The translations under genes were made by a program, and so were the position numbers. From the NCBI RefSeq assembly GCF_006345805.1, contig NC_043009.1:8680001-8744000 (forward strand): 64,000 nt of DNA, written 5' to 3'. The stretch is from Octopus sinensis (taxonomy: Eukaryota). Within the stretch, counting starts at the first letter, position 1. Each line of letters starts with the position of its first letter. This document shows positions 14,836-45,337 of the stretch, one piece after another. The notes beneath the pieces are model-generated. The model was not told where the DNA came from. It did not search any database and worked only from the letters and a program-made list of their open reading frames with translations.

Positions 14836-15011
14836 CAAGCGTCAGTACAACTGTCTCCACCAGACACCAACTTCATGTACATGGTACCTTAATGATGGTG
14901 CCTATTCTTTCCAACCAGACGAGAGTTATCGAATGCAGATTACTGTCCGCAACAGGAGAAAAAAACTCATCGCAAAGTCTAAGATCTTCTATATTTATTC
15001 TGCATTAATTG
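14836..15011 (+). CDS. Receptor exon: second half of the Cys-containing cytokine-binding domain (KRQYNCLHQTPTSCTWYLNDGAYSFQPDESYRMQITVRNRRKKLIAKSKIFYIYSALI)
   Basis: Acceptor ctttctctgtttcag, donor G|gtaagc; phase 2 in, phase 1 out; resembles the gp130 D2 segment DTPTSCT...VKP. Confidence 0.85.
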
Positions 15012-18000: not shown

Positions 18001-20378
18001 CAGTCATTTGGCTTCGCAGCCATGCTGGGGCACTTACCTTCAAGAGTTTAGTTGATATAATATCAACCTCAGTACTTATTTTAGTCTGGTACATTATTTT
18101 ATTAATTTCCATTTGCTGAACCATTATGTTACAGCATAAAGGGGTACAATATGATGAGACTATTATAGTCTAATGTTGACATTAACACAAATATGGACTT
18201 TGGCTTCATGCACACACACACTCAGAGAACATATAAGTTTGTTTATTTCTGTTCATTTTACATCCGTTTTCCCATGTTAGCACATGTTACATGGCTATAT
18301 TATTAAGACGTTGTTTACAGCTTGATATTCTTCCTGTTTCTCAAATGTGTGCCAGCAGGCAGTTTGTTGCCCGAGAAATGACAGCCACATCACCACGTGT
18401 AGCTCAGTAATTTTCAGAGAAGCGCAAATGTAAACAATGTGTGTGTGTATGTGTGTTGTTCATGCATGTGTCACATGCACATACGACACACAGATGCATG
18501 CATGCGCACACACACACACCTGAATGGCATTCTTTTGCAGCCATCATGCAATGTCCGGGCAAGGAGACACAAACATACATTTCTGAACTGATCAACTTTA
18601 TCATCTCTCTATATATAAACGGCAAAATGTCTGTCTGTGTGTGTGTCCTTTATACAAATCCACAATTTTTCAGTTAGAGGGCTCGCACTTTCTATGGTCA
18701 TTCAAAACCGTTCCAGGGTGGTCGTGCACACCTTTACATTTCCCCAGTCACCCCGCAAAGCCATTAAAAAATCAATAGAAGTAACTTTTTTGTGAATTTT
18801 CTATCCAAAACTCAATCAAAATGTCCGAAACTTGATATGCCAATTGAATGCCAGCTAGCTGTATGTGATTGGTCGGAGATTTGGACAGTACTTGCGTGTA
18901 TGTGAGCACACATGCAGCTGTATATGCATGCACTAGCACTATGACCTGGCAACGCCGGGTCATAGTGCTAGTTTGCATATAATTGAAATAATTAGAACCA
19001 AATATTAAATCTGTACATGTTGTTGTGGCAGTAAGCTTACTCCATTAGCTTATAGGGGAAACATATTTTAACAGTCATGCCTTTTACCAATGCTAATCTC
19101 CTTTTACTAAAGCAGAGAATGAAACTGTAAAATCCTCACATCTTTTTTGGTGGTCTTTAAGATTACATCTGTCTTTGATGATGTCATAAGAATTCAGAAA
19201 CTTTGAGAGTACGTGAAAATATGAAATAATTCTTTTTTGGGGAATAATGGATCTTGATGCAGATAAAGCGATTATTTATAGTTTTGAGTTAAATAAGAAT
19301 AAATGAAGACATACTAAAAGTCTTATAGTAGGACAAATGGTAAATTGCACATGTAGCTTTGTTTGTTACTGATTCAGTCATCATTGGTCCACAATAACAT
19401 GATGCATTCAGTTGCAAGTCGCATTTCGTTTATCATTGATTGATCTGTGTTGACACAGGTCCAAGCAATCGAAGATTCTGCTTGTACTGCAAAAATGCTC
19501 TTCAGTGACCACCCACTGTGACCAGTTGCCCAGAATGCACTGATTATTGCTTGTGTTCACATGACTGTACTGTGAGCCTGCATATTTTTTTTTTATAAGG
19601 CATTACAAACTTGTACCCATCAACATGGGACCGGTGAACAGAAAAAGTGTGAAGGCACTTGACCCTAACAAACAATGCAGATGAGTGTGTTCTTTATAGG
19701 AAAAGGTAGAGATGGTCAAGAAAATATATGAGGGTGGAAGCCTTGCTGCGGCAAGCCATGAGTTTGGTGTCAATGAATCTACCTTTCATTCCATTTACGT
19801 GTGGGGAGATGATTCTTTTATCACTGATTTTATTTTTTTTTGTAGGACTAAAACTCCCGTGATAAATAAGGATTTTCCTGAGTGTTTAACACAAGCTTAA
19901 TTAAATTACCACCAAACAATTATAACAGTGATATGACAATAATTAAAAGAAAGTTGTTATTGTTGTTGTTTTTCTCTCCTCTTCTTTATTTTTCTCTCCT
20001 TTCAAATTTTCTTCGTTATATTCTAATTAAAGTGAAACCAGCTAAACTGCGCGGCATCAAATGCCAACCATATAACAGTAGTTGTACCAACTTATCATGG
20101 AACCATACTCATCCACTGAAATGCAGAGTTCGTTACCACTCACAGTGGGATCCTTCCAATATTTGGGAGGTAAGTTGGCCCTTTTCTTTAAACTTTCTTA
20201 TCTTTTTTTTCTTGTACTTGTTTCAGTCTGTGATCATACTCGAACACAACCTTGTGGGGTTTAGTCAAACAAATCAGACCCAGTACTTATTCTATCGATA
20301 TCTTTCTGCTGAACCCCCAAGTTAACAGGGCCATAAACAAAGCGACACCAGTTGCCAACCAGTCTTGAAGACAAACAT

Positions 20379-20409
<31 letters not shown>

Positions 20410-22113
20410 TACACATATATACATGACAGGCTTCTTTCAGTTTCTATCTACCAAATCCGTTCACAAAGCTTTGGTCAGCCCAGGCCTTTGGTAGAAGACA
20501 CATGCTCAAGATGCCGCACACTAGGGTTGAACTTGTAACCATGAGGTTGTGAATCCAACTTCTTATTGCATACGAAATAAATGAACCACATTGATAATGC
20601 TGTTGTTGGTAATGTTGCTGCTGTTGCTGTTGAGTGAAGTGGTCTTCATCCCAGAGCTCGCAAGATGGGAGAAGTCCGAAACGTGGTCCTTTGCTAAAGC
20701 AGGTCAACCCCCGACACCAAGAGCATCAACGGATGGATGAATGCGCATCCAGGCTCAGTGGTTGCGTAGGAAGTCGGGGACAAGAAACAGGAAGAAAGAG
20801 TGAGAGAAAGTTGGGGCGAAAGAGTACAACAGGGGTCACCACCACCCCCTGCCGGAGCCTCGTGGAGTTTTAGGTGTTTTGCTCAATAAACACACACAAC
20901 GCCCGGTCTGGGAATCAAAACTGCAATCCTCCGACCGCGAGTCTGCTGCCCTAACCACTGGGCCATTGCACCTCCACACTGCTGCTGGTGCTGGTGGAGG
21001 CAGAGTAGTGGTAATGATGATGAGGTAAAGTAATTATCATTAACTACAGTAACTATTACATTTTAACAAGACTGTGTGTACATGGTCTCTCCACTTGCAG
21101 GAAATAGCAACCAAATCTCTCAACTCAAGCCCCACCATCTTGACTATAAAAAAAAGTATACATTGGACAATGTAGTCCAAGACATAATTCTACTAAAAAC
21201 TGGATGGTCACAATTGGAATGCTTCTGATCATAGGTCTGCTGGATCAGGGTTGACTTGATAATAAACGACAATTCTAATTTTTATCACTAGTTAAGCATC
21301 TGTGAGAGATAATTGGTATAAAGTTGTATTATTTACTGAAAAAATTATTATACATGAGATAATTAACCAATCTAAGACTATATTAAAATAATTACCAGAT
21401 ATTTTTTTAGCCCTAAGTCAGATCCTCTTTCATTAAACAGACATGGTGTGATGTATCTAAGACTACATTGTATGGGGTAATATGAGACAAATTTAGCTGC
21501 TGATTCTAGCAGCTCAAGCAAGCATGCAGAAGCTGCCTTCATTTGCTTGATTCATGGCTGCAATTCCAAGCAGTGCAAGTGACACCTTGTAGAGATTCCT
21601 CTGATTTTCTCAGTATATCTTTTTTATTTAACCCTTTAGTGTTTAAACCGGCCATATCCGGCCCAAATATTCTACATGTTTTATATTCAAACTGGCCATA
21701 TCCAGCCTCTCACACCTAACCTACTTTGACATTCTAAAAATAGACAATCACATCATTGAAACCTCAAACATAATGCATAATTAATTCAAAACAATTTGAG
21801 TGAAAAAGTATTACATTTAATAGAGAAATTTGAACACCAAAGGGTTAAAATAGCAGGGTATAGTTGAAGGGAAATTTAACTGCTATTTCTAACATTTTGG
21901 GTGACCACATAGCAATTCCAGCATTTCATGATGAGTCTTTATCCTTGTGGGTTTTAGTTAAATAAATCAACCCCAAGTCCAGTACTTATTCTATCAATCT
22001 CCTTTGCCAAACAGCTAAGTGGCAAGGGAAATAAACAAACCAGCACCAGTTGGCAAGCAGTAGCAGGGTCACAGAAGACACACACACATACATGCATTAT
22101 GTGTGTGGGGGTG

Positions 22114-22179
<66 letters not shown>

Positions 22180-23193: not shown

Positions 23194-23241
<48 letters not shown>

Positions 23242-24316: not shown

Positions 24317-27300
24317 ATACATACAGGGCATAGCTGTGTGGCTAGGAACCTTGTTTCTCACCGGCATAATCTCAGGTTCAGTCCCTGAAGCCTTTTGATT
24401 GAATTTGGTAGGCAGAAATTTCTGTTGTGTGTATACATGTGTGTGAGAGTACATGTGCCTCCTTTAATAGATAAGAGGGGAAAAACATACATATATGAAC
24501 ATAATATCTGTGTGTGTGTGCATGTTTAACCCTTTAGTGTCCTGATTATTCTATCATACATATTGCTAATTGATTCCCATTGATTTGAATTAATCAAGCA
24601 TTATCTCATATCTTCAAGATCTTGATGGTGTAATTACTTAATGTAGAATAACATTGTAGGGTAGGTGTGAGAGCCTGGATCTGATCAGTTTGAACATAAA
24701 ACAGATTAACTATTTTGGCTGGATATGGTCGGTTTAAATACCAAAAGGGTTAAAATGAAAAATGTAAATGCTCCCTAAGCCTTAATGTGCCACCATTCTT
24801 CACCAGCCTGATAACCAAAACTTGGAAATCACATTTACAAATGTTAAGTGAGATGATCTGGAATGGTTCGGCTGAAAATTGAACCTGCACTTCAGGTTTA
24901 ACTTGGAGCAAGCTTCCCACCATTCTCTGATGCTCTGTCTCTCTCCCCTCTCTCTCTCTCTCTCTCTCTCTCTCACCTTTACACACATACATACACAGTT
25001 TTTAATGGATGATAGGATACAGATTTAGACACATGAGGAAGTGTTATGTTTCAAGATCATTAACCCTTTCGTTACTGTAATTATTTTGAGATATTCTGTG
25101 TTTCTTTCAATCATTTTTAAATGTAGCAAAGAATTTAGTAAAATAACTAAGTTATCATTCAGCTAGTGTTAGGAACATAAATTGTGACTAAGGTTTGGTG
25201 AAGGATTTTAATTCAAAACTTATGAAAACAAGACATTTGTACTCAGAGCCAGGGCCGGTTTTGGTTGGGTTGGTAACGAAAGAGTTAAACTAACTTACAT
25301 CACTGAGAGGGATATTAAAAAAAAAAAGGTTTAGTAATGATGGAGCCCCTGTACAATTGTACAACCTGCTATAACTAGCTGTAAAATCTCCTTCAAACCA
25401 CATCATATTGTCTTAGAAATATTCAATAAATCAGTTCGAGATATGCACAGTTTATAAAAAAAAATTTAATCAGATGATCACAGCCTTTCACTTAAGCCTG
25501 CTCACTTTCATGATAACTTCAGAGTTAAACAACAACAACAGCAACAACAGACAGACAAACAGTCAACGCAGAATATGCAAATGAATTAATGTGTGTGTGT
25601 GTGTGTGTGATTTCACCCGAGTTCTGTTTAACTTTGTGTTTCTCTTTGTTTTATTTCCAGGAAAAGGATGTAACAAGAAAATCGTTTCTTCTTTGTGGTC
25701 TGACTCCTTACACAATGTACAATTTCAGTATATCTTGCCTTCCTCAGCTCACTAATAAACCATTCTGGAGTGACAAAACCAAGATAACTTTCAAAACACC
25801 ATCAGAAGGCAAGTAAAGATTTATGGGAAATCTTATTGATTGTTTAGTCTGTATTTTTGCATGAGTGTGTGTGTGTGTGTGTTTTGGATGGGTGTATGCA
25901 TATGTTGTTTTATATATCATCATCATCATCATACAGTGTTTTAAATTCAGGTTTTGTCCTCATTAACTGAGGTGACCGGATCTATCCCTAACAATAAATA
26001 TAGGATAAACATAACTAGACACCAGTTGTGAGTGGTTCGGTGTTATGAAGGGCATCCGGCTGTAAAAATCCTGCCAAAACATTTACAGAAGTCTGGTGCT
26101 GGCTTCAGCCTGGCTGGTTCTTGTGGTACCATCCCACCCATGTTAGCATGAAACACAGATGTTAAATGATGATGATGACGAAGTTGCACCAGACATCTTT
26201 TATCGACATATACAAAGTGTTAGACCTGTGTATTGATTATAAATGCCTGATCAAACGTGTCAGTTTACTTGAACAGATCTGACTATGCTTATACACCAAG
26301 AACCACTATAACATATTAGTAAACAGCTTTAACAACTTGATGATGTGTCTGAATATGACTGAATAATTTCACGAAGATTTTGAGCTCATGCTCTTCAACA
26401 GAGACTAGGAAAGAAAACAAAAGCGTTGTTTGCTTGGCTGATAGTACCTTAAATAGTCTTGTGCTTGAGGAGACCTATTGAGTCAAGTACATCAACATAA
26501 AAAATCAATGGAAATTGTAGTTGTGATCCCTGTGCCGGTGGCACGTAAAAAGCACCATCCGAAGGTGGCCGATGCCAGCGCCACCTCGACTGGCTTCCAT
26601 GCCGGTGGCACGTTGCCAGCCTCGCCTGGCACCTGTGCCAGTGGCACGTAAAAAACACCCACTACACTCACAGAGTGGTTGGCATTAGGAAGGGCATCCA
26701 GCTGTAGAAACACTGCCAGATCAGGCTGGAGCCTGGTGCAGCCTTCTGGCTTCCCAGACCCCGGTTGAACCGTCCAACCCACGCTAGCATGGAAAACGGA
26801 CGTTAAAAGATGATGATGATGATGATGCCATATAAACAGCACCTGTGAATTGTAGTCGTGGTCACTGCCAGTGCCATGTAAATGGCACCTGTACCGGTGG
26901 CATGTAAAAGTACCCATTACAGACCTAAATTGGTTGGCATTAGGAAGGGCATCCAGCTGTTAAAACCATGTCAAATCAGACTGGAACCTGGAGCTGCTCC
27001 AGTCAAACCATCAAACCCATGCCAGAATGGAGAGCAGACATTAAATGATGATGATGACTACAGAGATAATTCTTTGATTTATTTATTTATTTATTTTGTT
27101 TAATTATTTCAGTTCCTGAGAAAGCACCTGCTATACCCGGTACTTATTTCAGAATGGTCCAGCAGACGAACAAACACTGTTCTCAAGTTATACTGTATTG
27201 GAAAGTATGTTACCTATTGTATAAGTTTATCTATGTTGACAGGTGTTATAATGAATTTAAATCTAGATTTGACTCAAACTTTATATATGAAAAGCAAAGT

Positions 27301-27716: not shown

Positions 27717-30700
27717 CACACACATATATATATTATGATCATGAAATTAGCATTAGCTTATCTCACTCTTTCTCGTGGAACCCCTGGGAAATTTTGTGGT
27801 ACTCTAGGGTTCCGGGGAACCCTGGTTGAGAAACACTGATCTAGGGCTTTATTGTCAGATGTGCCCTACTTTTTACTCCTTTCCTTCTTTTATTTTTTTT
27901 AAAGATGGTAGAATGTAATTTACATTCAGAGATTTGACTAACATTTCTAGCAAACCATGCAGCCACATAGAGGTTACCTTATTAACTTTTTTACATGTTT
28001 TATTCCACTTTACTGACATGAGTTCTTCATTGTTTTAATTTTCAGAAAGTTCCTCTTCGATTTCAATACGGTAAACCTCAGGGCTTCTTGATTCAGTACC
28101 GGCCAAAGCATGAGAACTGGATGGAGGTGGAGGTGCGACAAGGACTTGCCTCTGCAATGATTTGCCTCAGAGCTGATAAAGCCTATGAGTTGCGTCTTTA
28201 TGCCAGAAATGACGTTAATTTCTCTACAGGATACTCAACTCTGTTCATTGAAACTGTGGATGGAAGTAAGTTGCCTTCAAGCTTAGACTTCTGTGAGAGA
28301 ATTACCTTCATTCTGATATAAGTTGCCTTCAAGCTTAGACTTCTGTGAGAGAAGTTCCTACATTCTGATATAAGTTGCCTTCAAGCTTAGACTTCTGTGA
28401 GAGAAGTTCCTACATTCTGATATAAGTTGCCTTCAAGCTTAGACTTCTGTGAGAGAATTACCTTCATTCTGATATATTCAATTTGCTAAATAATGGTTCC
28501 TCTCACTGTGTTACTGCATAGGAGTGACACCAAAATTCAAAATAACTATCTATGAAATTTCTTATCTCTTTAATCTCTATATATATATATTTCTTAACTA
28601 CCCACAAGGGGCTAAACACAGAGGGGACAAACAAGGACAGACAAACGAATTAAGCCGATTACATCGACCCCAGTGCGTAACTGGTACTTTATTTATCGAC
28701 CCCGAAAGGATGAAAGGCAAAGTCGACCTCGGCGGAATTTCATCCTTTCGGGGTCGATAAATTAAGTACCGGGTCATAGTGTTAGTGTATATTAAGTATC
28801 CAATTCTAACATTAAAACTAAATTTTTAACATTAAAATCAGCCTAACTTTGTTGGAGTTCTTAAAAGTTTTTAATGTGCAGTTTACCATTTTCTTAGTGA
28901 ATTTTCATTCCAACCGTGTGAAACTAAGTAAATTCAGGCTCTGTGTATGATATTGTAATTTAAGAATGTAATTTAAATGTTGCTGCTTGTTTGTCACTGC
29001 TATTGTCATTACACTCAGTGGTAGAAAGAATTACAATTTACAAGTAACATTAGTCCAGAAATCATTCTTATGGATTCTGTATAGTCTGAAAAGGATTTTG
29101 TATGATTCATGGTGTGAGTGACACCATAAGTTACCACTGCACCCTGTGATACAAACGGCTGTGTAACTGGGAAGGAGCAGTCCATCCCAAGTGATGCTTT
29201 TATGGGGGCAGCCCCTTTGGGTCTGCTGCATAAACTTGTATAAGTTTGGGGGACAGGGAAATGGCAAACCTGGGCTTCTGTAAGAGAAGTACCTACATTC
29301 TAACACAGGTCACTTTACTAAATAATGATTCCACCCACTCATGTTACTATATAGGGGTAGCACCAAAATTCAAATTTATTGTATGATATTTTTCAAAATC
29401 ACTTACCTAACTAAATCATGCATGCTCCCATATACATATATGCATTCACACACACACACTTACATATATATATCATCATCATCATCATCATCATTTAACG
29501 CCTGTCGTCCATGCTGCCATGGATTGGATGGTTTGACTGGGTTGGCATGCTGGAAGGCTGCACCAGACTCCAGTCTGATGTAGCATGACACAGAGTGTGA
29601 CAAGGCTGGCCCTTTGAAATACAGGTACAACAGAGACAGAAAGAAAGAGTGAGAGAAAGTTGTGGTGAAAGAGTACAGCAGGATTCACCACCATCCCCTG
29701 CCGGAGACTCTTGGAGCTTTCGATGTTTTTGCTCAATAAACACTCACAATGCCCGATCTGGGAATCGAAACCGCGATCCTGCGACTGCGAGTTCGCTGCC
29801 CTAACCACTGGGCCATTGTGCCTCCATTGCCTTGATTACAACTACATTATTAACACAAACAAACTAAGTCCGTAACAAGCTTTAGCCATCATGGTCATCA
29901 TTGTCACTATCATCATCGTTCCTACCACCCTCACCATCACCACCACCACCATCATCAATTCTAATGTTTATTTTTTTACCATGTTGACATGAATGTGGTG
30001 TATCCTCCTCCTCCTCCTCCTCCTCATCATCATCATGTCTGCTTCTCTATGCTGACATCAGTTGGACTGGTATATTTCGGCACAGTCTCTCATCACTTGT
30101 TCTAATCCTTCGGCATTTTTTTTTCCATGAGGTCCAGCATCCTGTAACCAGATCTCACTACTTCTTCCCTCATCTTTTTGCAGCCTCCTTCCACTTACAT
30201 TTCCTGACTATATTTCTAGCACTGCCCAATAAATTACACTGTACATGTAACTTAGATACAGTGCAAGTCCTGATCATGTAATAGGTGTGGCAGTATTTTA
30301 TATGTCAGACGGTGTATGTAAAGTCAAAGTCAAAACAGAAATTTTGTTTGTTTTACTTTTTTGTTTATTTTTTTCATTCACATTAAAATATTTCCCATCA
30401 TCATCATCATCATCATCATCGTTTAGCATCTGCTTTCTATGCTGGCATGGGTTTGACTGGAACTGGTAAGCCACAGAGGTGCACCAGATTGCAGTCTGAT
30501 TTGGCATGATTTCTACAGCTGGATACCATTCCTATAATGACAACCACTCCCAAGAGTGTAATGGGTGCTTTTTATGTGCCAACAGCACGGGTGCCATTTA
30601 CATTACACTAGCAATGGCCACAACTATGATTTCATTTGGCTTAACGAGTCTTCTCAAGCACAGCATATTGCCAAAGATCTTAATCGCTTACCATTGCCTC

Positions 30701-32618
30701 CATGAGGCCCAACATTTGAAGAGCCCTATGGCAACAACCTCACTCAAGTTGCCCCGTAGTGGGACTGAACTACCAGCAACAACCTCATTCAAAAATACAG
30801 TATCTGGTTATAATTATCACATATCTTTACATTCTCTACTTTCTTGCTTTTTTTTATTTTTATGCATTCTTTTAAAAATTTTGTTTTTCTTTATTATTTG
30901 CATATAAGTCTACCTTGGGATACTTACCTAACAACTTTTATTTTCTGTCCACAGGACCTGGACAACCCGTAAATTTCACTGCTGAAACTCTACCTATTAA
31001 AGGGACAAGTTTATATAATTTAACTTTGAGCTGGGGAAGGCCATCGGTAGATGTAAAAGGACTGAAATCTTGGAGATACTTGCTCATGTGGTGCCATAAG
31101 TCATCAAACATTATTTATAACTGTGAAGTAAGTTACTGAATTTATAAATTCTATTTGTAAAGAAAACGAATTTTAGTTTCAGTTGTGTCTCAGATGGTTC
31201 GTTATTCAAATAATAAACATGTACTATGCAAAATCTTTTATCTTTAATCATTAGATTGTGGCCATGCTGGGGCATCGCCTTGAAGAATTTATAGTTGAAT
31301 GAATCCACCCCGGTGCTTACCTTTAAAGCCTGGTACTTATTTTATTGGTCTCTTTTGCCCGACTACTAAGTTACAGAGATGTAAACACCAACAGCGGTTG
31401 TCAAGTGGTGATGGGGACAAACACAGATACAAGGACACGCATACACATACATATATATTTATATATATATATATAGATAGATAGATAGATAGATAGACAG
31501 ACAGATAGATAGGCTTCTTTCAGTTTCCATCTACCAAATCCACTCGCAAGGTTTTGATTGGTCTGAGGCTATAGCAGAAGACACTTGCCCAAGTTGCCTT
31601 GTAGTGGGACTGAACTCAGAACCATGTGGTTGGGAAGCAAGTTTTTTACCACATTTGACGGCAGCCATGCTGGAGCACCACCTTCAAGGGTATTATTAGC
31701 GAAACAAATTGACCCCAGGGTTATTTGTTTTTAAAACCCAGTACTTATTCTATCAGACTCTTTTGCTGAACCATAAATGCACCAACACCAGTTGTCAAGC
31801 AGTGGTGGTGGACAAACACAGACACACACCCATATATATACATATATATATACATATAAATATATAAATACACAAACACACACATGTATATGTATATAAA
31901 GCTAAGCAGAGTTGGCAGTTGAAATAACCATTTAAGGGATAAAAATATCCATTCTTACTACCAGTATTATTTACCTATGCTGTCCCTGGGCATGGGTATG
32001 CAAGCACACTATGCTCATATGGTACAGGTAAATATATATATATATTATATATATATATATAGATAGATAGATAGATAGATAGACAGACAGATAGATAGGC
32101 TTCTTTCAGTTTCCATCTACCAAATCCACTCGCAAGGTTTTGATTGGTCTGAGGCTATAGCAGAAGACACTTGCCCAAGTTGCCTTGTAGTGGGACTGAA
32201 CTCAGAACCATGTGGTTGGGAAGCAAGTTTTTTACCACATTTGACGGCAGCCATGCTGGAGCACCACCTTCAAGGGTATTATTAGCGAAACAAATTGACC
32301 CCAGGGTTTATTTGTTTTTAAAACCCAGTACTTATTCTATCAGACTCTTTTGCTGAACCATAAATGCACCAACACCAGTTGTCAAGCAGTGGTGGTGGAC
32401 AAACACAGACACACACCCATATATATACATATATATATACATATAAATATATAAATACACAAACACACACATGTATATGTATATAAAGCTAAGCAGAGTT
32501 GGCAGTTGAAATAACCATTTAAGGGATAAAAATATCCATTCTTACTACCAGTATTATTTACCTATGCTGTCCCTGGGCATGGGTATGCAAGCACACTATG
32601 CTCATATGGTACAGGTAA

Positions 32619-32657
<39 letters not shown>

Positions 32658-34309
32658 TCAGACTTCTTTCAGTTTCCATTTACCAAATCCTCTCACAAGG
32701 CTTTGGTCAACCAGAGGCTATAGTAGACTACATTTGCCCTGGATGCCACACAGTGGTACTGAACCTGAGACCATGTGGTTGAGAATCAAGCTTCTTACCA
32801 CACAGCCACACCTACATCATGAATTGTGGCCTTTCCCTTAAGCATGGTTGTCCACAACTTTGTATTAGAATAAAACAGCAAATAACATTTTGACATTACA
32901 CTTGAATTGACGTCTAGGTTGTGTGGTGGATGTGTCTGAAAGGATTGAGGAAGGACTCTTTCAACTTTGGTGAATCCCTCATTGACCTTTTCAAGTTCTC
33001 CTTAGAAAGGAAATTGCAGAGATCAAGAGGGAAGTGATCCCTTCTAGTGAATTTGTGAAAAGATGGGTGACTGGTCCTACTCTAAGCATGCACCTGTAGA
33101 TTTGAGAGCACGAGAGAGAGATTGTGGTCAGAGTAAACATGAATCTGCCTGGTATCTTGATTGGCCCTAGCTGGAGTGTCACCTGTAATAGGAGTACTAT
33201 ATTATCTTATACTTTGTATAATATTATGTAATTTCACCAATTTTTTCCATTTCTTCCTCCCCGTCTTTTATGTAAATCCCCACACAAGTTGTTGTCTGTC
33301 CTTGTGATGTCCCCCTCATCAATGCCCTTGTGGCTAATAAAAGAAATTGTTATTGTTATTATTATTATTATTATTATTATCATTACTATTATTATTTTTA
33401 TTATTATTATCTCATAGGACGATCCACAATGGATTCATTTACCAAATTCCATACTTGAACATTCCATGAAGGTTAAAGGTCGTTTTATGAAGAATTTAAT
33501 CTTTGGACTTGCAACCAAAGCCACGTTTGCAGATGTAGAACCAAGACTAGAAGACGGTAGTAAAACTGATTATGGGAAGAATATTAGCAGTGGCTTGGTT
33601 TGGGCTCCGTGCATATTCAGAAAAGACTGGAGTAAGTTGACCCCTTTTTTCTTTTCTATCTCTGTAAGTCATATTATACTTGTAAATCTGAGAGCTCAGT
33701 CCTTTTGACATTTTGGTACCATAATAGGAGTGCAATTACACCTTCAGATTACACCCTTATTAGAAGGAGTGGGTATAGAATAATGTGATACCGAGCGAAT
33801 ATGCCCTGAAAATGACAGTGATCATTGCTGGAATGTCCTTTATAGGCGTGGCTGTGTGGTTAAGAAATGTGCTTCTTAACTGCATGCTTTTAGGTTCGGT
33901 CCCTCTGTGTGGAAGGGAGCTTGGGACAACTACAACCGGGGGCCGACAAAGACTTGTGAGTAGATTTGTTACACAGAAACTGAGAGAATAACGCGATATT
34001 ATTTGGAATCTATGCTCAGGTTATAAAGGGAAATAACTCCGCAAGCTATTTACTGAATACTTAATTTTGCGATTTCAACTTTTTTTTTTTAAATCTTTAC
34101 ATTTTAGTCTTGTGTTCTTTTTGGACCACAAGTCTTGTGACTATGGCCCTAATGAAATTTCACATTAAATGGGGTTTTTTCTGTCGACAGCCTAGTGTTA
34201 ATTTTATTCAAGTTTCTGGTTTCATCAAATCACTAAAATACTCGTCGATGTAAAGGGACGCAACTCGATGCACTGTTTTGCTGTGATGTACATACAAACA
34301 TTTTGTGTA

Positions 34310-34353: not shown

Positions 34354-36203
34354 CACGTCTGAGCTTACTATATATATATATATATAGTAAGCTCAGACGT
34401 GGGTGTGTGGTAAAAAGCTTGTTTCACAACCACATGGTTCTGGGTTCAGTCTCACTGCGTGGCACCTTGGGCAAGCGTCTCTTCTACTGTAGCCTTGTGA
34501 GATGTGGTAGACGGAAACTGAAAGAAGCCCGTCGTATATATATGTATATACATATAATTGTGTGTCTCTTTGCACCCAACCACTGTTTGACAGCTGGTGT
34601 TAGTGTGTTTACATCCCTGTAACTTAGCGTTTCAGCAAAAGAGTCCGACCAAATAAGCATTAGGCTTCAAAAAATAAGTCCTATGGTTAATTTGTTGGGC
34701 TAAACCCCTTCAAAGTGGTGCCCCAGCATGGCTGCAGTCAAATGACCAAAATAAGTAAAAGATAAAAGATGTTTATATATAAATCCAGCAATCCTCACCT
34801 GTTTCTAAGCAAGATAATCTTTTCCCGTGGCCAAACAGAATATTGTTAAGGAATGACACTGCTTGTATGACTATGACAATCATTTTACCACTACCACATC
34901 AAGGCAAGGAGACACAAATATACACATACATATTCTTATATACATACATACATGTGCACACTCACACACACATGACAACCTTTTTTTTAGTTTGTATTTA
35001 CCAAATCCACTCACAAAGCTTTGGTCAGCCCAGAGCTGTTGTAGAAGACACTTGCCCAAGGTTCCACACAGTGGGACTGAACCTGGAAACTTGTGGATAG
35101 GAAACAAACATCTTTGCACACTGCAACTATAATTTTTCAGCTTGCTACAATATGATATACACATCGTTACCCAACTATTTTATATAACGATATCCTTGTA
35201 AGACCTATGTTATACAATCAATTAATTATGTTAATTGATTATAATATATTTGATCAACTAATTATAATTATTCATACATGTTTTTTTTGTTTTTTTACAA
35301 CTTCAGAACCTCTTGAAGCTCCTTCAGGCATGAACTTTGGTGATATCACAGACAAATCTTTACTGATAAACTGGGACGCAATGAAATGTGAAGAATCTCC
35401 AACCCAGATTATTGAGTATCTCATTCATTATTGCCCAATAAACTCTTCGAAAACTTGTCATGGTGAGTGACTCTGCTTTCTTAGTCCCCTTGCTTTCTTC
35501 ACATTAAACTTGGTTTTTAAAATGCAGGGATGTGGGGTGGAGTGAGAGGGTCCATAATTAATTATTGAATCTTTTTTATTTCTTTTATTGCCCACAAGGG
35601 GCTAAACATAGAGAGGACAAACAAGGATAGACAAAGGGATTAAGTTGGTTACATCGACCCCAGTTGATAAACATTATTCAAGGCACAGTATGTTTGCAAA
35701 ATATAGTTTCACTGCATGGCACCTTGGGTGAATATTTTCTACTCAAGCCTTGTACCAACCAAAGCCTTGTGAGTGGATTCAGTAAAAGGAAATGAAAGAA
35801 GCCTGTCATATACAGAGTCCTCCAAAAAAATATATACACACTTCAGGAACGGGAAGAATCTATATGAACGTTTTGATTCAGTGTTATCGCAATTTGACAA
35901 AACACCGAAAGAAGTATCCATAGAGGTACTCATACAAGTTAAATGTTTAAAATAATAATGAAATTATTGTACACAGTGCTCAGGTGCACCACAACTTGTC
36001 AAAAGTGCATATAAAGTATATGCAGTAATGTACAAATGTCTGGAAAGCGAACAATGTATGAGTCAGATACATGCTTGTGTGTGTATGGAGGGGAGGAAAT
36101 CAGGTGTAGTGTTGGCGAATCTCAGAAAGCATGGAAGTTTTGAAGGATGCTTCTTTCCTGAAGTGTGTGTACATTTTTTGGCCAAACTCTGTATATGTAT
36201 ATA

Positions 36204-37487: not shown

Positions 37488-37520
<33 letters not shown>

Positions 37521-42267: not shown

Positions 42268-45200
42268 CTTATATATAATGTTCATATCAATATATGTGTG
42301 TACTTGCTTCTAAAACCATACATCATATGTTTGTGTGTTTGTCTGTGGATATGTGTGTGTGTGTGTGAAATTTGATGTTTTACATTATGTGTGTAATCAT
42401 GTAATTCAAGATGTTTTCATTGATTCTTGGAGCAAGTGATTTTTTTTTTTTAAATTTGATACTCTTCAGTATGTGATGGTGGTTGTTATTGTTGTTGTTT
42501 AAAACCAGTTTATCCCTGATCAAGTTATTCTGTGTTCAAAGCTGTTCCAGATGTGACCAAGCTGTCTTTTCCTTCTTTTAGACACTGTGCGTATAGGACT
42601 ATATTAATTTTTGGCGAGCTGGCTGACACGTTAGCACGCCGGGCGAAATGCTTAGCAGTATTTCGTCTACCGTTACATTCTGAGTTCAAATTCCGCCGAG
42701 GTCGACTTTGCCTTTCATCCTTTTGGGGGTCGATAAATAAAGTACCAGTTTCACACTGGGATCGATGTAATTGACTTAATCCGTTTGTCTGTCCTTGTTT
42801 GTCCCCTCTATGTTTAGCCCCTTGTGGGCAATAAAGAGATATATATTAATTTTTGGCAGTGATCAAGAACCAGTAGAAGAAACTAATTGCATATAGGTTC
42901 AGGCATAGGTGTTGTTGTGTGGTTAAGAAACTTGCTACTTGACCATGTGGTCTTGGGTTCAGTCTCACTCTGTGGCACTTTGGGTAAGCATCTTGTCCTG
43001 TAACCCCAGGTCTACCAAAGCCTTGTGAGTGGATTTGGTAGACAGAAATTGAAGGCGGCAAGCTGGCAGAAACGTTACCAAGCCAGGCGAAATGCTTAGC
43101 GGTATTTTGTCTGCTGTTACATTCTGAGTTCAAATTCCGCCACGGTCGACTTTCCCTTTCATCTTTTTGGGGTCGATGTAATCAACTTAATCCCTTTGTC
43201 TGTCCTTGTTTGTCTCCTCTATGTTTAGCCCCTTGTGGGTAGTAAAGAAATAAGAAACTGAAAGAAACCCATCATGTGTGTGTGTGTGTGTCTTGCCATC
43301 ATAGTTGTAAATGAGCATCACCATCATACAAGTAGTGTTCATTTCCAGTCTTCCATGGAAAACATATCTGGTCATGGAGAATTATTACCTTGCTTAGAGA
43401 GAGCTGAGGGTTGGTGACAGGAATTGCATCTGGTTGTGGAACATTTCCCTCGACAAATTCTGTCTGACCTAAGCAAGCATGGAAAAAGAAAAACAGACGT
43501 TAAATGAGGAGGAAGAGGAGGATGTTTACTTGGTAAACGGGTGTCTGGAACATAGGTCTGAGATAAAATTATGATGTTAGGTGGGTTTGAATCAGGAAAA
43601 AAAACTAGAGGGTGAAAAGGGTTAAATCAAAAGGGCTAAATATATGACATTAAGTGGATGATCATCATCATCATCAGCATCTTCAACGATCTTTTTTTTT
43701 TTGTTTTTTTTATATGTAAGTGTCTGAGCCATAAGTTTCCAATTAACCAATCATTAGTTCATTGTATTTTTTTATGTTAAAAGTTTGAGCCAATCAGAAA
43801 GAATACATTCTTTTATTTATTTTTTTTGGTGGGAGGGGTTGCTCATGACCAGTGTTAGTGTGTTTACATCCCTGTAAGCTAACAGTTTGGCAAAGGAGAC
43901 CGATGGAATAAGTACCAGGCTTTAAAAGAAAATGAGTCCTGGGATTAATTTGTTTGAGTAAAATTTAATCAAAGCAGTGCCCCAGCATGGCCACAGTTCA
44001 AATGACTGAAACAGATAAACGATAAAAGATACAGGATTTCAACAACAATGCTACAGGGTCTTTTATTCTTTACTATTTCTTCTTGACTTATTATTTCATG
44101 TTTGTTTATTTATGTTTGTTTGTTTTTTTTCTGTTGAAGGTCCTGCTAGTGTGGCCCATGTCAGGGGCAATGATACGAGTTACATCCTAACAGATCTAAC
44201 TCCTGGGCTTCAGTATCGAGTCTGGATGCAAGCTGTGTCTCCTGCTGGCGAGGGACCAGTGAGTTTACCCATATTCAGCGTGGTTGTTAACGACAGTAAA
44301 TATTCTTTAAATTTTTACACATATAATTATCATTATCTCATCATCATCATTATCATCTTCTTCGTCATCATTGACTTCCTCACTTTCATCATTGCTTTCC
44401 AGTTTTCAGACTGACCGCCAACCAACCCTTTTATAAGATCTATGCTTTAAGAATCATCAAGCATAGAGAAAACCTCTATGCAGTTACTGAGCATGCTAGA
44501 AATAGTAACCATGTATCCCTCAAATCACACAGATAAACACATTGCATAGTGGTTGTCTTATACACCCCTTGAAAATGCGAAAAGCAAGGCTGAAATATCT
44601 CTTATTTTAGATCCATTTGATCAGAGTTGGTTGGCCTACAGTTGATATCCTCATCATCATCATCATCATCATCAATATTTTATTTAATGCACTTCATTGT
44701 CTGTATCCATCATTAGCCATGTCGACACCCTAATACATTGTCCAAGTAAAGGCTATAAACTGGAATGTAATATTGTGTGTGTGTATATGGAAGACCACGC
44801 AAAAATATAAAGTATCACACATGACAAACTGCTTATTAATTCTTAGAGGAGTGACTGCTTGGGAAACCGAAGTGCTGTAAGCGTTGCCCTTATAGGCACA
44901 GACATGGCCGTGTGGTTAAGAAGTTTACTTTCCAACCGCATAGTTTCAGGTTCAGTCCTATGGTGTGGCACTTTGGACACGTGCCTTTTGACTGTAGCCC
45001 CAGGCTAACAAAAGCCTTGTGAATAGATCTGGTTGGCAAAAAACTGTGAAAACCGTTATGTATGATTGCATATTTGTGTACATTTTTTATATTCTTACAA
45101 TGATGCAGACAAGCTCAACTCCTCGTCAGTTGTTGGCCAAATATCATGTGTGTGTGTGTGTGTGTCTGATTACTTAAGCTACCTTTTCACCCATCATGTT

Positions 45201-45337
45201 ATATTGTGATCAACTTGCACTCACTCCCATTTCCATTGCTTTCTCTTTACAGAGCTCACCTCTGAAGCTATTGCTGCCATCATAATCTCAATCATTATCC
45301 TAATCTGCCTCATTCTCAGCTGCATATGTGCAGTCAG
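14836..45337 (+). CDS. Partial multi-exon gene: tall class I cytokine receptor (gp130/IL6ST/Domeless-like); cytokine-binding module + 3 FN3 + TM; 10 exons located
   Basis: Exons 14836-15011, 20033-20169, 25661-25808, 27113-27204, 28046-28265, 30955-31127, 33418-33631, 35307-35462, 44140-44295 and 45253-45337 splice in one open frame (1557 nt). Motifs: C...TPTSCTW...VKP, LTPYTMYNFSISC..FWSD, SSGLVWAPC, LTPGLQYRVWMQAVSPAGEGP, then a hydrophobic helix. Confidence 0.9.
15247..15641 (-). mobile_element. SINE family A, full length
   Basis: Reverse complement of the 7421-7867 type. Confidence 0.85.
15719..15866. mobile_element. hAT-type MITE
   Basis: Perfect 8-bp TSD gtcacaat (15711-15718 and 15867-15874); imperfect TIRs cactggcgtaactag / ctagctaccctagtg. 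Confidence 0.75.
16499..16905 (-). mobile_element. SINE family B with internal tandem duplication
   Basis: One head and two bodies inside a single 12-bp TSD tgtatagtttcc (16487-16498 and 16906-16917). Confidence 0.8.
16943..17330 (-). mobile_element. SINE family D (tRNA head), tail type i, nested in a family A copy
   Basis: Minus-strand head gtggaggcgcaatggcccagtggttaggg...gtttcgattccc (A and B boxes); 13-bp TSD ccactcacaagga. Confidence 0.88.
18604..18971 (+). mobile_element. Non-autonomous Helitron (second copy)
   Basis: A|TC...CTAG|T; colinear with 10022-10394 over the full length. Confidence 0.8.
19625..19800 (+). mobile_element. Tigger/pogo transposase 5' remnant (CENP-B/psq-type HTH)
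   Basis: MGPVNRKSVKALDPNKQCR*VCSL*EKVEMVKKIYEGGSLAAASHEFGVNESTFHSIY; two in-frame stops. Confidence 0.7.
20033..20169 (+). CDS. Receptor exon: first half of the second cytokine-binding FN3 (VKPAKLRGIKCQPYNSSCTNLSWNHTHPLKCRVRYHSQWDPSNIWE)
   Basis: Acceptor ttaaag, donor GAG|gtaagt; phase 1 in, phase 0 out; completes VKP with the previous exon. Confidence 0.85.
20620..20977 (-). mobile_element. SINE family D head with tail type ii
   Basis: Shares the tRNA head and the gaaagagtgagagaaagtt segment with 16943-17330, then an unrelated 3' body. Confidence 0.75.
21632..21844. mobile_element. piggyBac-type MITE, family 2
   Basis: TTAA|ccctttagtgtt ... aacaccaaaggg|TTAA. Confidence 0.8.
22516..22624. 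repeat. G-rich minisatellite, 28 bp x about 4
   Basis: tgagactgggatggtgggagggaagaac at 22516, 22544, 22572 and 22600. Confidence 0.95.
24530..24749. mobile_element. piggyBac-type MITE, family 2 (opposite orientation)
   Basis: TTAA|ccctttagtg ... taccaaaaggg|TTAA; reverse-complement similarity to 21632-21844. More decayed copies near 47160-47370, 51700-51920 and 55145-55325. Confidence 0.75.
25064..25284. mobile_element. piggyBac-type MITE, family 1
   Basis: TTAA|ccctttcgttac ... gtaacgaaagag|TTAA; same ends as the 5084-6116 element. Confidence 0.8.
25661..25808 (+). CDS. Receptor exon: WSxWS-position exon (EKDVTRKSFLLCGLTPYTMYNFSISCLPQLTNKPFWSDKTKITFKTPSE)
   Basis: Acceptor ttttatttccag; donor AG|gcaagt (GC donor) gives the phase 1 that the next exon requires; FN3 L.P.T.Y motif. 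Confidence 0.88.
27113..27204 (+). CDS. Receptor exon: FN3 first half (VPEKAPAIPGTYFRMVQQTNKHCSQVILYWK)
   Basis: Acceptor taattatttcag, donor AAA|gtatgt; phase 1 in, phase 0 out. Too short to appear in the ORF track. Confidence 0.85.
27500..27838. mobile_element. hAT-Charlie-type MITE with internal microsatellite
   Basis: TIR ca(a/g)tgtttctcaacc at both ends; 8-bp TSD atttaggg / atctaggg. Confidence 0.78.
28046..28265 (+). CDS. Receptor exon: FN3 second half (KVPLRFQYGKPQGFLIQYRPKHENWMEVEVRQGLASAMICLRADKAYELRLYARNDVNFSTGYSTLFIETVDG)
   Basis: Acceptor ttttaattttcag, donor A|gtaagt; GKPQGFLIQY and YELRLYARN FN3 motifs. Confidence 0.9.
28267..28474. repeat. Minisatellite, 52 bp x 4
   Basis: Units start at 28267, 28319, 28371 and 28423; two unit variants in A-B-B-A order. 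Confidence 0.95.
28574..28785 (+). mobile_element. Helitron-ended element with a SINE-derived interior
   Basis: A|TCTCTATATATATA 5' end and CCGGGTCATAGTGTTAG|T 3' end match the Helitron family; the interior is SINE-B sequence with a fold-back. Confidence 0.55.
29472..29826 (-). mobile_element. SINE family D head joined to the RTE 3' UTR and (GAT)n tail
   Basis: Family D sequence 29581-29826 abuts C-type RTE tail 29472-29580 on the same strand. Confidence 0.65.
30955..31127 (+). CDS. Receptor exon: FN3 first half (RPGQPVNFTAETLPIKGTSLYNLTLSWGRPSVDVKGLKSWRYLLMWCHKSSNIIYNCE)
   Basis: Acceptor ttttctgtccacag, donor GAA|gtaagt; phase 1 in, phase 0 out. Confidence 0.9.
31470..32642. repeat. Near-identical tandem duplication, 586-587 bp unit
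   Basis: Anchors 31511/32097 and 32021/32608; apart from microsatellite length I saw only one extra T. Confidence 0.92.
33418..33631 (+). CDS. Receptor exon: FN3 second half (DDPQWIHLPNSILEHSMKVKGRFMKNLIFGLATK...ISSGLVWAPCIFRKDW)
   Basis: Acceptor tatctcatag, donor A|gtaagt; SSGLVWA.C resembles invertebrate Domeless-type receptors. Confidence 0.88.
34394..34770 (+). mobile_element. SINE family A
   Basis: Colinear with 7421-7867, more diverged. Confidence 0.75.
35307..35462 (+). CDS. Receptor exon: membrane-proximal FN3 first half (KPLEAPSGMNFGDITDKSLLINWDAMKCEESPTQIIEYLIHYCPINSSKTCH)
   Basis: Acceptor ttttacaacttcag, donor G|gtgagt; phase 1 in, phase 1 out. Confidence 0.9.
37280..37697 (-). 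mobile_element. SINE family A, full length
   Basis: Reverse complement of the family A consensus. Confidence 0.85.
38509..38553 (-). ncRNA. Decayed hammerhead motif, same family as 54353/54474
   Basis: Minus strand AACAC-CUGAAGA-A-GGCUG(9 nt)CAGCC-AAAA-CAUA; G12 lost; flanking acaacaaacaagatgag shared with the 54.3-54.6 kb element. Confidence 0.45.
38766..38803 (+). ncRNA. Minimal type I hammerhead-ribozyme motif (degenerate), Penelope-like repeat
   Basis: UCUUU-CUGUGGA-A-GAGC(AUAG)GCUC-GAAA-UGUU-AAAGA: stems I and II pair; core deviates from CUGANGA. Confidence 0.55.
38887..38921 (+). ncRNA. Minimal type I hammerhead-ribozyme motif, Penelope-like repeat
   Basis: GUUU-CCGACGA-A-GAG(CUCCA)CUC-GAAA-CGUC-AAAC; palindromic ACGU stem III; GUC cleavage triplet; U4 replaced by C. 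Confidence 0.65.
39043..39491 (+). mobile_element. 3' end of an RTE-clade LINE
   Basis: MLYGSETW...AQRAMERSMFGISLR...RWAGHVARLTDNRWT...WYPRERKRPPG (39063-39341) is typical RTE ORF C-terminus; ends ggtcaaagtgatcaaagtgat. Confidence 0.85.
39522..39652. mobile_element. Tc1/mariner-type MITE
   Basis: TA|cagggtgtcccaaaaaaatgtatacaca ... tgtgtatacatttttttgggacaccctg|TA; 28-bp perfect TIRs. Confidence 0.85.
39659..40172. mobile_element. MITE with 68-bp TIRs and AT-rich interior
   Basis: 39659-39726 is the near-perfect reverse complement of 40105-40172. Confidence 0.7.
40931..41234 (-). mobile_element. SINE family D head with tail type iii (RTE-like tail)
   Basis: Same head; 3' end aligns with the LINE end at 39430-39491. 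Confidence 0.8.
44140..44295 (+). CDS. Receptor exon: membrane-proximal FN3 second half (GPASVAHVRGNDTSYILTDLTPGLQYRVWMQAVSPAGEGPVSLPIFSVVVND)
   Basis: T-rich tract + gaag acceptor, donor A|gtaaat; canonical FN3 L.PG..Y.V.V.A...GEGP.S. Confidence 0.9.
45253..45337 (+). CDS. Receptor exon: transmembrane helix (KLTSEAIAAIIISIIILICLILSCICAV-R)
   Basis: Acceptor ttctctttacag, donor AG|gtaaat; phase 1 in, phase 2 out; about 22 hydrophobic residues. Not in the ORF track. Confidence 0.85.

What the first reader, a model, noticed from the sequence alone, without database searches (positions are those of the whole stretch)
14836..45337. Hidden tall class I cytokine receptor (gp130/Domeless-like) with the ancestral intron-phase signature
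Seen: ten small exons (85-220 nt), two of them absent from the ORF track, join into one frame of about 519 codons: Cys-containing domain half, four FN3 domains, TM helix. The introns around the cytokine-binding module are phase 2-1-0-1. Established: vertebrate class I cytokine receptor genes follow a 1-2-1-0-1 phase rule, and gp130/Domeless carry three extra FN3 domains before the membrane. Inference: this is a probable cephalopod JAK-STAT receptor whose exon structure is shared with vertebrate receptors; no ligand can be assigned from the sequence.
Basis: partly seen in the sequence, partly recalled or inferred. Interest (0 to 1): 0.72.

Follow-up and report, generated by a model that had tools for sequence, protein, structure and literature searches.

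The report
Octopus gp130/Domeless-type cytokine receptor exons

Summary
Ten + strand exons (14836-45337; 176, 137, 148, 92, 220, 173, 214, 156, 156 and 85 nt) join into 519 codons. The product is identical to residues 171-688 of RefSeq XP_029644049.1, "uncharacterized protein LOC115218400 [Octopus sinensis]" (1240 aa, gene about 125 kb).

The intron phases are 2-1-0-1 around the cytokine-binding module. The missing phase 1-to-2 exon, which carries CX9CXW, lies upstream of the window. In the Argonauta hians orthologue the full 1-2-1-0-1 pattern is present.

A profile of the cephalopod and scallop orthologues hits human gp130 first in the PDB. The E-value is 3e-24 for the whole protein and 7e-13 for the Ig+CBM part, and the match is colinear from the Ig domain to the TM helix. 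A low-confidence fold model also lands on CRLF1 and gp130.

The scallop orthologue is named "interleukin-6 receptor subunit beta-like". The near-identical O. vulgaris protein is already named "cytokine receptor domeless".

There are three caveats:
- WSXWS is degenerate (WSDKT).
- No YxxQ motif occurs in the tail.
- JAK/STAT coupling is inferred only from a conserved box-1-like motif that lies outside the window.

Verdict: correct, ordinary, and already annotated. A conserved 34-nt candidate alternative exon after the TM exon is a small new lead.

The parts
14836..15011 (+). It encodes the second half of CBM domain 1, including the second cysteine pair (NCLHQTPTSCTW).
   Evidence: Splice sites and frame. 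Identical to P0001 residues 171-229. Argonauta exon of 176 nt with the same phases. The motif aligns with gp130 CKAKRDTPTSCT.
20033..20169 (+). Coding exon 5, 137 nt, phase 1/0. First half of CBM domain 2; it starts with the VKP hinge.
25661..25808 (+). Coding exon 6, 148 nt, phase 0/1. Second half of CBM domain 2, with FWSDKT at the WSXWS position. It has a GC donor (AG|gcaagt).
   Evidence: Argonauta has a GT donor at the same position. FWSDKT aligns on gp130 YWSDWS.
27113..27204 (+). Coding exon 7, 92 nt, phase 1/0. Start of the first membrane-proximal FN3. It is too short to appear in an ORF list.
28046..28265 (+). Coding exon 8, 220 nt, phase 0/1. Rest of the first membrane-proximal FN3.
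   Evidence: (100% match to P0001 residues 367-427).
30955..31127 (+). Coding exon 9, 173 nt, phase 1/0. First half of the second membrane-proximal FN3.
   Evidence: The Argonauta exon is 176 nt, one codon longer.
33418..33631 (+). Coding exon 10, 214 nt, phase 0/1. Second half of the second FN3, with a long loop insertion.
   Evidence: The Argonauta exon is 217 nt. My own first guess for this exon (33109-33193) was wrong.
35307..35462 (+). Coding exon 11, 156 nt, phase 1/1. First half of the third FN3.
   Evidence: Pfam fn3 E 9e-16 for exons 11+12 joined.
44140..44295 (+). Coding exon 12, 156 nt, phase 1/1. Second half of the third FN3.
45253..45337 (+). Coding exon 13, 85 nt, phase 1/2. Juxtamembrane residues and the transmembrane helix (EAIAAIIISIIILICLILSCICAV).
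52135..52168 (+). Tentative: a conserved 34-nt candidate alternative or poison exon in the intron after the TM exon. Read from the TM exon it gives R-F-L-S-H-S-A-G-stop, a receptor with almost no tail.
   Evidence: About 95% identity over about 55 nt (52120-52175) with the colinear Argonauta intron, including the acceptor tract cccttctttccacag| and |gt. There is no transcript evidence.

Best explanation
The window carries coding exons 4-13 of 16 of Octopus sinensis LOC115218400. This gene spans about 125 kb and encodes a 1240-aa type I membrane protein built like gp130/Domeless. The order of its parts is: signal peptide, Ig-like domain, two-domain cytokine-binding module (CBM), three FN3 legs, one TM helix, and a tail of about 550 aa with no enzyme domain. 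The window encodes the stretch from the second half of CBM domain 1 to the TM helix. The likely mechanism is inferred by homology to gp130 and Domeless. An unidentified secreted ligand would bind the Ig/CBM elbow and bring two chains together. A JAK held on the conserved membrane-proximal proline motif (NLPSLPDEP, box-1-like) would then be activated. It would phosphorylate tail tyrosines, which recruit a STAT or other adaptors. Shown here: the exon structure, gene identity, domain architecture, family-level homology to gp130 and purifying selection. Inferred only: ligand binding, JAK binding and STAT activation.
For: The spliced window peptide is identical to P0001 residues 171-688. P0001 is XP_029644049.1 of O. 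sinensis, and its 90% cluster contains CAI9731568.1 'cytokine receptor domeless [Octopus vulgaris]'. The scallop homologue (31% identity, E 9e-99) is named 'interleukin-6 receptor subunit beta-like'. An Ig+CBM profile against the PDB gives gp130 as the first 10 hits, at E 6.6e-13 to 6e-11. CRLF1 follows, with IL-31RA, IL-7Ra, LIFR and gamma-c further down among other hits, including RPTP delta. Both cysteine pairs are aligned in these matches. The full-length profile gives gp130 at E 3e-24 for the top 7 hits, colinear to the TM helix. The window's CBM part alone already puts gp130 first, at E 0.0024. Foldseek of the Ig+CBM model finds CRLF1, gp130 and IL-23R first, and the gp130 CBM structure 1bqu scores TM 0.67. 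Pfam gives sub-threshold LIFR_D4, IL6Ra-bind, TSLPR_D1 and EpoR_lig-bind hits at the same CBM domain 1 position in four orthologues (octopus, a second cephalopod, scallop and an unidentified relative), and no kinase or phosphatase domain. The CBM intron phases are 1-2-1-0-1 in Argonauta and 2-1-0-1 in the window. dN/dS is 0.084. The box-1-like PxxPxxP motif about 22 aa after the TM helix is invariant in four cephalopods, and a proline-rich equivalent occurs in scallop.
Against: The WSXWS motif is not canonical. Cephalopods have W-S-[DE]-x-T, and scallop has FLSKEV. In cephalopods the two F-strand arginines that pair with it in gp130 (FRIRC) are serines (FSISC). No YxxQ STAT-docking motif occurs in any cephalopod tail. 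No Pfam cytokine-receptor family reaches its gathering score. The structure model is of low confidence (pLDDT 64, pTM 0.38). The box-1 exon and the tail lie outside the window. No ligand, JAK or STAT was examined here.
Confidence: 0.85

Rival explanations
1. It has a class I cytokine-receptor fold but is not a canonical JAK-STAT signaller. In this reading the mollusc lineage receptor signals through other adaptors, for example through its conserved C-terminal ...TPDLPTTDL PDZ-type ending, or it acts mainly as a co-receptor or decoy.
For: The WSXWS motif is degenerate and the Arg ladder is lost. No YxxQ occurs in cephalopod tails, whereas scallop has two. The extreme C-terminus is strongly conserved and ends in T-D-L, or T-E-L in scallop. 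A conserved candidate exon would give a tail-less form.
Against: The box-1-like motif is invariant at the expected distance from the membrane. The 550-aa tail is conserved with several invariant tyrosines. From my own recollection, not checked here, Domeless also has an incomplete WSXWS motif yet signals through JAK/STAT. JAK and STAT genes are reported in molluscs (PMC13203501).
Confidence: 0.12
2. It is a generic FN3 adhesion molecule or receptor-phosphatase-like protein, and the cytokine-receptor resemblance is only FN3 background.
For: With the window peptide alone, the best PDB hits are RPTP sigma and fibronectin at E about 7e-11. Pfam reports only fn3 and FN3_DSCAM above or near threshold.
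Against: Those hits cover only the last FN3 or one other FN3. The CBM region and the family profile hit gp130 first and colinearly over six domains. The CX9CXW motif and the second Cys pair are present. The tail has no phosphatase domain. The CBM has the specific 1-2-1-0-1 phases.
Confidence: 0.02
3. It is a decaying pseudogene or a gene-model artefact.
For: One GC donor is present. The introns are huge and full of repeats, and the gene spans about 125 kb.
Against: The frame stays open through all exons. dN/dS is 0.084 against Argonauta. Full-length intron-free transcript contigs exist in other cephalopods. AG|GCAAGT is the standard GC-AG donor context.
Confidence: 0.01

Closest known systems
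Human gp130 (IL6ST), PDB 1bqu, 1p9m, 3l5h, 8d82
   Same: The architecture is the same: Ig, two-domain CBM, three FN3, TM helix, box 1, long tail. Both cysteine pairs of CBM domain 1 align, including TPTSCT. The match is colinear at E 3e-24. As I recall, not checked here, gp130 also has two exons per FN3-like domain and phase-1 boundaries between domains.
   Different: Identity is only about 20%. WSDKT replaces WSDWS, and the Arg ladder is absent. No YxxQ motifs are present. The tail is about twice as long and ends in a conserved TDL. The ligand and partner chains are unknown.
Drosophila Domeless
   Same: It is the protostome tall class I receptor with a CBM plus FN3 legs and, as I recall, an incomplete WSXWS motif. 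The O. vulgaris orthologue is named after it.
   Different: The Domeless CHD is encoded by a single exon (PMC1963337), whereas the octopus CBM keeps four exons with phases 1-2-1-0-1. No Domeless sequence was available here, so orthology was not tested.
Mollusc 'IL-6 receptor subunit beta-like' proteins (e.g. Argopecten irradians XP_069126353.1)
   Same: It is a direct homologue at 31% identity and E 9e-99. It shares the same N-terminal motifs (VEY..., CRVYNWE.MTC.WDLG, DCPH.TPTSCTW) and the same domain order. Such mollusc receptors are already discussed in PMC13203501.
   Different: Scallop has YxxQ motifs, a more arginine/lysine-rich F strand (VKIR) and a shorter tail.
Ciona gp130-like, and the class II cytokine receptor gene structure
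   Same: Ciona gp130-like has a GP130-like multi-exon CHD (PMC1963337). Class II receptor genes show phases 1-2-1-0-1-0 (PMC8863823). The octopod CBM shows 1-2-1-0-1.
   Different: Those are deuterostome genes, and this one is a lophotrochozoan gene. Exact codon-level intron positions against human genes were not compared here.

Membership tests
Class I cytokine (haematopoietin) receptor superfamily | Cytokine-binding module made of two FN3-like domains | tested here: met
   The orthologue profile aligns over the whole gp130 CBM at E 6.6e-13. Foldseek gives TM 0.67 to 1bqu (low-confidence model). In the window, exons 14836-25808 encode the second half of domain 1 and all of domain 2.
Class I cytokine (haematopoietin) receptor superfamily | Four conserved cysteines in CBM domain 1, including C-x9-C-x-W | tested here: met
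   CRVYNWEKMTCTW (residues 137-149) is encoded upstream of the window. CLHQTPTSC (176-184) is encoded in window exon 14836-15011. Both are invariant in five orthologues and align on the gp130 cysteines.
Class I cytokine (haematopoietin) receptor superfamily | WSXWS motif near the end of CBM domain 2 | tested here: not met
   Only W-S-D-K-T is present (window 25661-25808). Other cephalopods have WSEVT or WSDIT, and scallop has FLSKEV. The partner arginines are absent. Incomplete motifs are tolerated in some accepted members (my recollection, not checked here), so this lowers the claim but does not exclude membership.
Class I cytokine (haematopoietin) receptor superfamily | Single TM helix, no intrinsic enzyme domain, membrane-proximal proline-rich box 1 | tested here: met
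   The TM helix lies in exon 45253-45337. Pfam finds no kinase or phosphatase domain. LPSLPDEP at residues 711-718 is invariant in cephalopods. The motif lies outside the window.
Class I cytokine (haematopoietin) receptor superfamily | CBM encoded by four exons with intron phases 1-2-1-0-1 | tested here: met
   The window shows 2-1-0-1. The full 1-2-1-0-1 pattern is present in the Argonauta orthologue. The rule itself was verified in text only for class II receptors (PMC8863823). For class I it was verified only qualitatively (PMC1963337) and otherwise rests on my own knowledge.
Class I cytokine (haematopoietin) receptor superfamily | Binds a JAK and activates a STAT on ligand binding | not testable with these tools
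   No YxxQ occurs in the cephalopod tails. This needs biochemical assays.
gp130-type 'tall' receptors (gp130, LIFR, G-CSFR, Domeless) | N-terminal Ig-like domain plus CBM plus three membrane-proximal FN3 domains | tested here: met
   Pfam gives Ig_3/ig at residues 29-101 and fn3 hits. The alignment to the gp130 ectodomain is colinear, with a first stretch through the Ig-like domain, the CBM and the first FN3 leg and a second through the last FN3 and the TM helix. Three two-exon FN3 units lie in the window.
Pfam IL6Ra-bind / LIFR_D4 / EpoR_lig-bind (CBM domain 1 families) | Score above the curated gathering threshold | tested here: not met
   The best score is LIFR_D4 at 21.7 bits against a cut-off of 25. 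IL6Ra-bind scores 12-18 bits against 24.3. The hits fall at the same position in four orthologues.
Orthologue of Drosophila Domeless specifically | Phylogenetic grouping with arthropod Domeless rather than with other class I receptors | not tested
   No Domeless sequence or broad taxon sample could be fetched. The only support is a database name for the O. vulgaris protein.

The most novel reading that the evidence does not exclude
Two readings remain open. First, cephalopods may keep the complete vertebrate-type CBM gene structure while having lost the WSXWS/Arg ladder and YxxQ docking sites. Second, they may carry a deeply conserved 34-nt exon (52135-52168) that would make a tail-less decoy isoform. 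That would be receptor self-regulation of the kind Drosophila achieves with a separate short receptor gene (Latran/Eye transformer). It could also point to non-canonical signalling through the conserved TDL C-terminus.
Probability: 0.25. Interest if true: 0.45.

Novelty: already known. Interest (0 to 1): 0.22.

Why it matters
The result confirms that an unaided reading of raw sequence can recover a fragmented, repeat-swamped receptor gene correctly. Biologically, the gene is the obvious entry point to JAK/STAT-type cytokine signalling in cephalopods, where no ligand is known.

Its four-exon CBM with phases 1-2-1-0-1 in a lophotrochozoan supports an old idea. On that idea, this gene structure predates the protostome-deuterostome split, and the single-exon Drosophila dome CHD is a secondary loss.

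Both points are incremental. The gene model exists in RefSeq. The O. vulgaris copy is already called "cytokine receptor domeless". Mollusc gp130/IL6R-like receptors have been surveyed in print (PMC13203501).

Tried and rejected
- **Upstream exon guess.** I proposed 9212-9295 (ELKFICYKHDPADHMCVW, CX9CXW). It is a chance match in TG-microsatellite DNA. The real exon (CRVYNWEKMTCTW) is not in the window.
- **Seventh exon guess.** I proposed 33109-33193. It is wrong; the real exon is 33418-33631.
- **Fifth exon acceptor.** I first placed it at 28082. The real acceptor is 28046.
- **Box-1 or tail exon downstream.** A search of 45338-64000 by motif and by tblastn found nothing. The window ends inside the intron after the TM exon.
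- **Protein searches.** The search for homologous proteins with the spliced peptide returned nothing, even though the protein is in the database. The Ig+CBM profile returned only one protein. The word index evidently misses these sequences.
- **Contig look-ups.** Look-up of a window ORF found nothing. The O. sinensis locus is too long to fetch. The scallop locus is not on record.
- **tRNA scan.** ARAGORN found no tRNA-like sequence in the window.
- **Literature.** Searches for an explicit class I 1-2-1-0-1 statement found only the class II equivalent.
Full report
**What is there**

The window is AT-rich eukaryotic DNA full of microsatellites and transposon debris. On the + strand I rebuilt a chain of small exons with canonical splice sites. 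Eight were obvious. Two needed help, and two of my own guesses turned out to be wrong (see below).

The key step was a HMMER search of one contiguous exon translation (window:28082-28264). It found a 1240-aa protein, P0001, that is 100% identical over the exon. tblastn of P0001 on the window and exact reconstruction give ten exons:

| Exon | Coordinates | Length (nt) | Phase in/out |
|---|---|---|---|
| 1 | 14836-15011 | 176 | 2/1 |
| 2 | 20033-20169 | 137 | 1/0 |
| 3 | 25661-25808 | 148 | 0/1 |
| 4 | 27113-27204 | 92 | 1/0 |
| 5 | 28046-28265 | 220 | 0/1 |
| 6 | 30955-31127 | 173 | 1/0 |
| 7 | 33418-33631 | 214 | 0/1 |
| 8 | 35307-35462 | 156 | 1/1 |
| 9 | 44140-44295 | 156 | 1/1 |
| 10 | 45253-45337 | 85 | 1/2 |

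Together they make 1557 nt, or 519 codons. The product is identical to residues 171-688 of P0001. All acceptors are AG. All donors are GT except one GC donor in the standard AG|GCAAGT context at 25809.

**What gene it is**

P0001 is XP_029644049.1, "uncharacterized protein LOC115218400 [Octopus sinensis]". It sits on a 72-Mb chromosome of assembly GCA_006345805.1, and the gene spans about 125 kb.

The window matches the O. sinensis protein and not the O. vulgaris one, which differs by at least one residue in this stretch. Three other proteins fall in the same 90% cluster:
- CAI9731568.1, "cytokine receptor domeless [Octopus vulgaris]";
- XP_052828310.1 of O. bimaculoides, uncharacterised;
- older fragmentary O. 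bimaculoides models.

More distant relatives are:
- Argonauta hians, 77% identity;
- two sets of full-length proteins from intron-free Logan contigs of 4-7 kb, 47-49% identity, presumably transcripts of other cephalopods (one search shows one 4602-nt contig with an uninterrupted 1241-codon frame);
- Argopecten irradians "interleukin-6 receptor subunit beta-like", 31% identity, E 9e-99;
- a 434-aa fragment from an unidentified relative.

**Is it real and under selection?**

I threaded the Argonauta protein exactly onto its 69-kb locus (L001). It has 16 coding exons. Its exons 4-13 correspond one to one with the ten window exons. All phases are identical, and 8 of 10 lengths are identical; the other two differ by one codon.

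blastn of the window against L001 finds colinear conservation only at the exons, apart from dispersed repeats and two short intronic blocks. Over 518 aligned codons, dN is 0.098, dS is 1.17 and dN/dS is 0.084. This is a functional gene, not a chance chain of open frames.

**What the protein is**

The full protein has these parts in order:
- a signal peptide;
- an Ig-like domain (Pfam Ig_3, E 3e-5);
- a two-domain module;
- three further FN3 domains;
- one TM helix;
- a tail of about 550 aa with no kinase or phosphatase domain.

The two-domain module carries both cysteine pairs typical of class I cytokine receptors. CRVYNWEKMTCTW (C-x9-C-x-W) is encoded upstream of the window. CLHQTPTSC is encoded in the first window exon. 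Both are invariant from octopus to scallop.

With the window's CBM part alone, the best PDB sequence hits are already gp130 (E 0.0024). DCC follows, and then IL-31RA, IL-7Ra and G-CSFR.

With a profile of the Ig+CBM region of five orthologues, the first ten distinct PDB sequences are all gp130, at E 6.6e-13 to 6e-11. They align from the Ig domain through both CBM domains with the cysteine pairs in register. CRLF1 comes next (1e-10). IL-31RA, IL-7Ra, LIFR and the common gamma chain follow further down, interspersed with RPTP delta and other hits.

With the full-length profile, gp130 takes the first seven places (E 3e-24 to 2e-18). The alignment runs in two colinear stretches, through the CBM and the first FN3 leg, and then through the last FN3 and the TM helix. 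LAR phosphatase appears only afterwards, through a single FN3.

An AlphaFold model of Ig+CBM from the five-sequence alignment is of low confidence (pLDDT 64, pTM 0.38). Its Foldseek neighbours point the same way: CRLF1, gp130 and IL-23R come first, and the isolated gp130 CBM (1bqu) scores TM 0.67 at 3.7 Å.

Pfam gives only sub-threshold hits to the CBM domain 1 families (LIFR_D4, IL6Ra-bind, TSLPR_D1, EpoR_lig-bind). These fall at the same place in four orthologues.

It is met only superficially, by the single window peptide. There the canonical last FN3 dominates the score.

**Gene structure**

In Argonauta the CBM is encoded by four exons bounded by introns of phase 1-2-1-0-1:
- The first exon carries the first cysteine pair.
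- The second carries the second pair.
- The fourth carries the WSXWS position.

The window holds the last three of these exons (phases 2-1-0-1). Each of the three legs is also split into two exons, with phase-1 boundaries between domains.

Two papers support the comparison. PMC1963337 states that the GP130-like multi-exon CHD structure is largely conserved among class I receptors and in Ciona, whereas the Drosophila dome CHD is a single exon. PMC8863823 gives 1-2-1-0-1-0 for class II receptor genes. The exact 1-2-1-0-1 rule for class I is from my own knowledge; I did not find it stated in the library. I could not compare codon-level positions with human genes.

**How it probably works, and the caveats**

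By homology, the Ig/CBM elbow should bind a secreted ligand and drive dimerisation. A JAK bound to the membrane-proximal motif would then act.

A box-1-like motif, NLPSLPDEP, sits about 22 residues after the TM helix. It is invariant in four cephalopods and has a proline-rich counterpart in scallop.

Several points weigh against a fully canonical receptor:
- The WSXWS position reads WSDKT. Other cephalopods have WSEVT or WSDIT, and scallop has FLSKEV.
- The two arginines of the gp130 F strand (FRIRC) are serines (FSISC).
- No cephalopod tail has a YxxQ motif, although scallop has two.

The extreme C-terminus (…PAHYF.DPEITPDLPTTDL) is strikingly conserved and ends like a PDZ ligand. The box-1 exon and the tail are outside the window. 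JAK/STAT coupling is therefore plausible but unproven.

**Novelty**

The gene model is in RefSeq. The near-identical O. vulgaris protein is already named "cytokine receptor domeless". Mollusc gp130/IL6R-like receptors have been surveyed (PMC13203501, which does not mention octopus).

Two things are new here: the explicit statement that octopod genes keep the 1-2-1-0-1 CBM structure, and the side observation described next.

**Side observation**

In the intron after the TM exon, about 55 nt (52120-52175) are about 95% identical between O. sinensis and Argonauta. Synonymous sites between the two species are saturated. The block reads cccttctttccacag|GTTTTTGTCTCATAGCGCTGGATAAATCTTGTAG|gttttt.

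Spliced to the TM exon, it would add RFLSHSAG (RFLSHSPG in Argonauta) and then a stop. The result would be a receptor with almost no tail. It may be a conserved alternative or poison exon, but I saw no transcript evidence.

**Dead ends**

- My upstream exon guess (9212-9295) and my first seventh-exon guess (33109-33193) were both wrong.
- The word-indexed protein search missed the gene when given the spliced peptide.
- Spliced peptides are not accepted by the representatives search.
- The O. sinensis and scallop loci could not be fetched.

Noticed in passing
window 52120-52175 (+); L001 about 48454-48510: About 55 nt in the intron after the TM exon are about 95% identical between O. sinensis and Argonauta. 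The block looks like a 34-nt exon (52135-52168) with an acceptor tract and a GT after it. Spliced to the TM exon it reads RFLSHSAG-stop, which would give a tail-less receptor isoform or a poison exon.
   Followed up: partly
window about 3421-3470 (+); L001 30271-30320: A colinear block of about 50 nt is conserved in the intron upstream of the first window exon. A microsatellite follows it in both species. Its role is unknown.
   Followed up: partly
window 25809-25814: The intron after the WSXWS-position exon uses a GC donor (AG|gcaagt) in O. sinensis. Argonauta has gtgagt at the same site.
   Followed up: yes
window 31493-32065 and 32079-32650 (+): A tandem duplication of about 586 bp lies inside an intron. 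The translated segments are identical in both copies and include a SINE-like unit.
   Followed up: no
window, many sites on both strands, e.g. 15396-15700, 16218-16460, 20326-20540, 37176-37661, 46171-46700: One dispersed repeat occurs many times. It translates as ...SVSIYQIHSQGFGQP.AIVEDTCPRCHAVGLNPEPCGW... and is usually next to CA/TA microsatellites. It is probably an octopus SINE. ARAGORN finds no tRNA-like part.
   Followed up: partly
window 5313-5729 (+): An open frame resembles the N-terminal part of a piggyBac-type transposase (…FFLLF…IITAETNRYA…). It lies inside the intron upstream of the first window exon.
   Followed up: no
window 39015-39338 (+) and 49402-49836 (+): Two open frames look like C-terminal ends of LINE reverse transcriptases (…LYGSETW…WAGHVARL…; …RVQFAGHCCRAENE…). 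Both lie inside introns.
   Followed up: no
outside the window: P0001 residues 1218-1240: The extreme C-terminus, EELPAHYF.DPEITPDLPTTDL, is almost invariant in cephalopods and ends in TEL in scallop. It resembles a PDZ-binding ending, which is not a feature usually described for gp130 or Domeless.
   Followed up: no
tool behaviour: The word-indexed protein search did not return XP_029644049.1 when queried with a peptide sharing more than 400 identical residues with it. It also missed it with the family profile, although it holds the protein.
   Followed up: no
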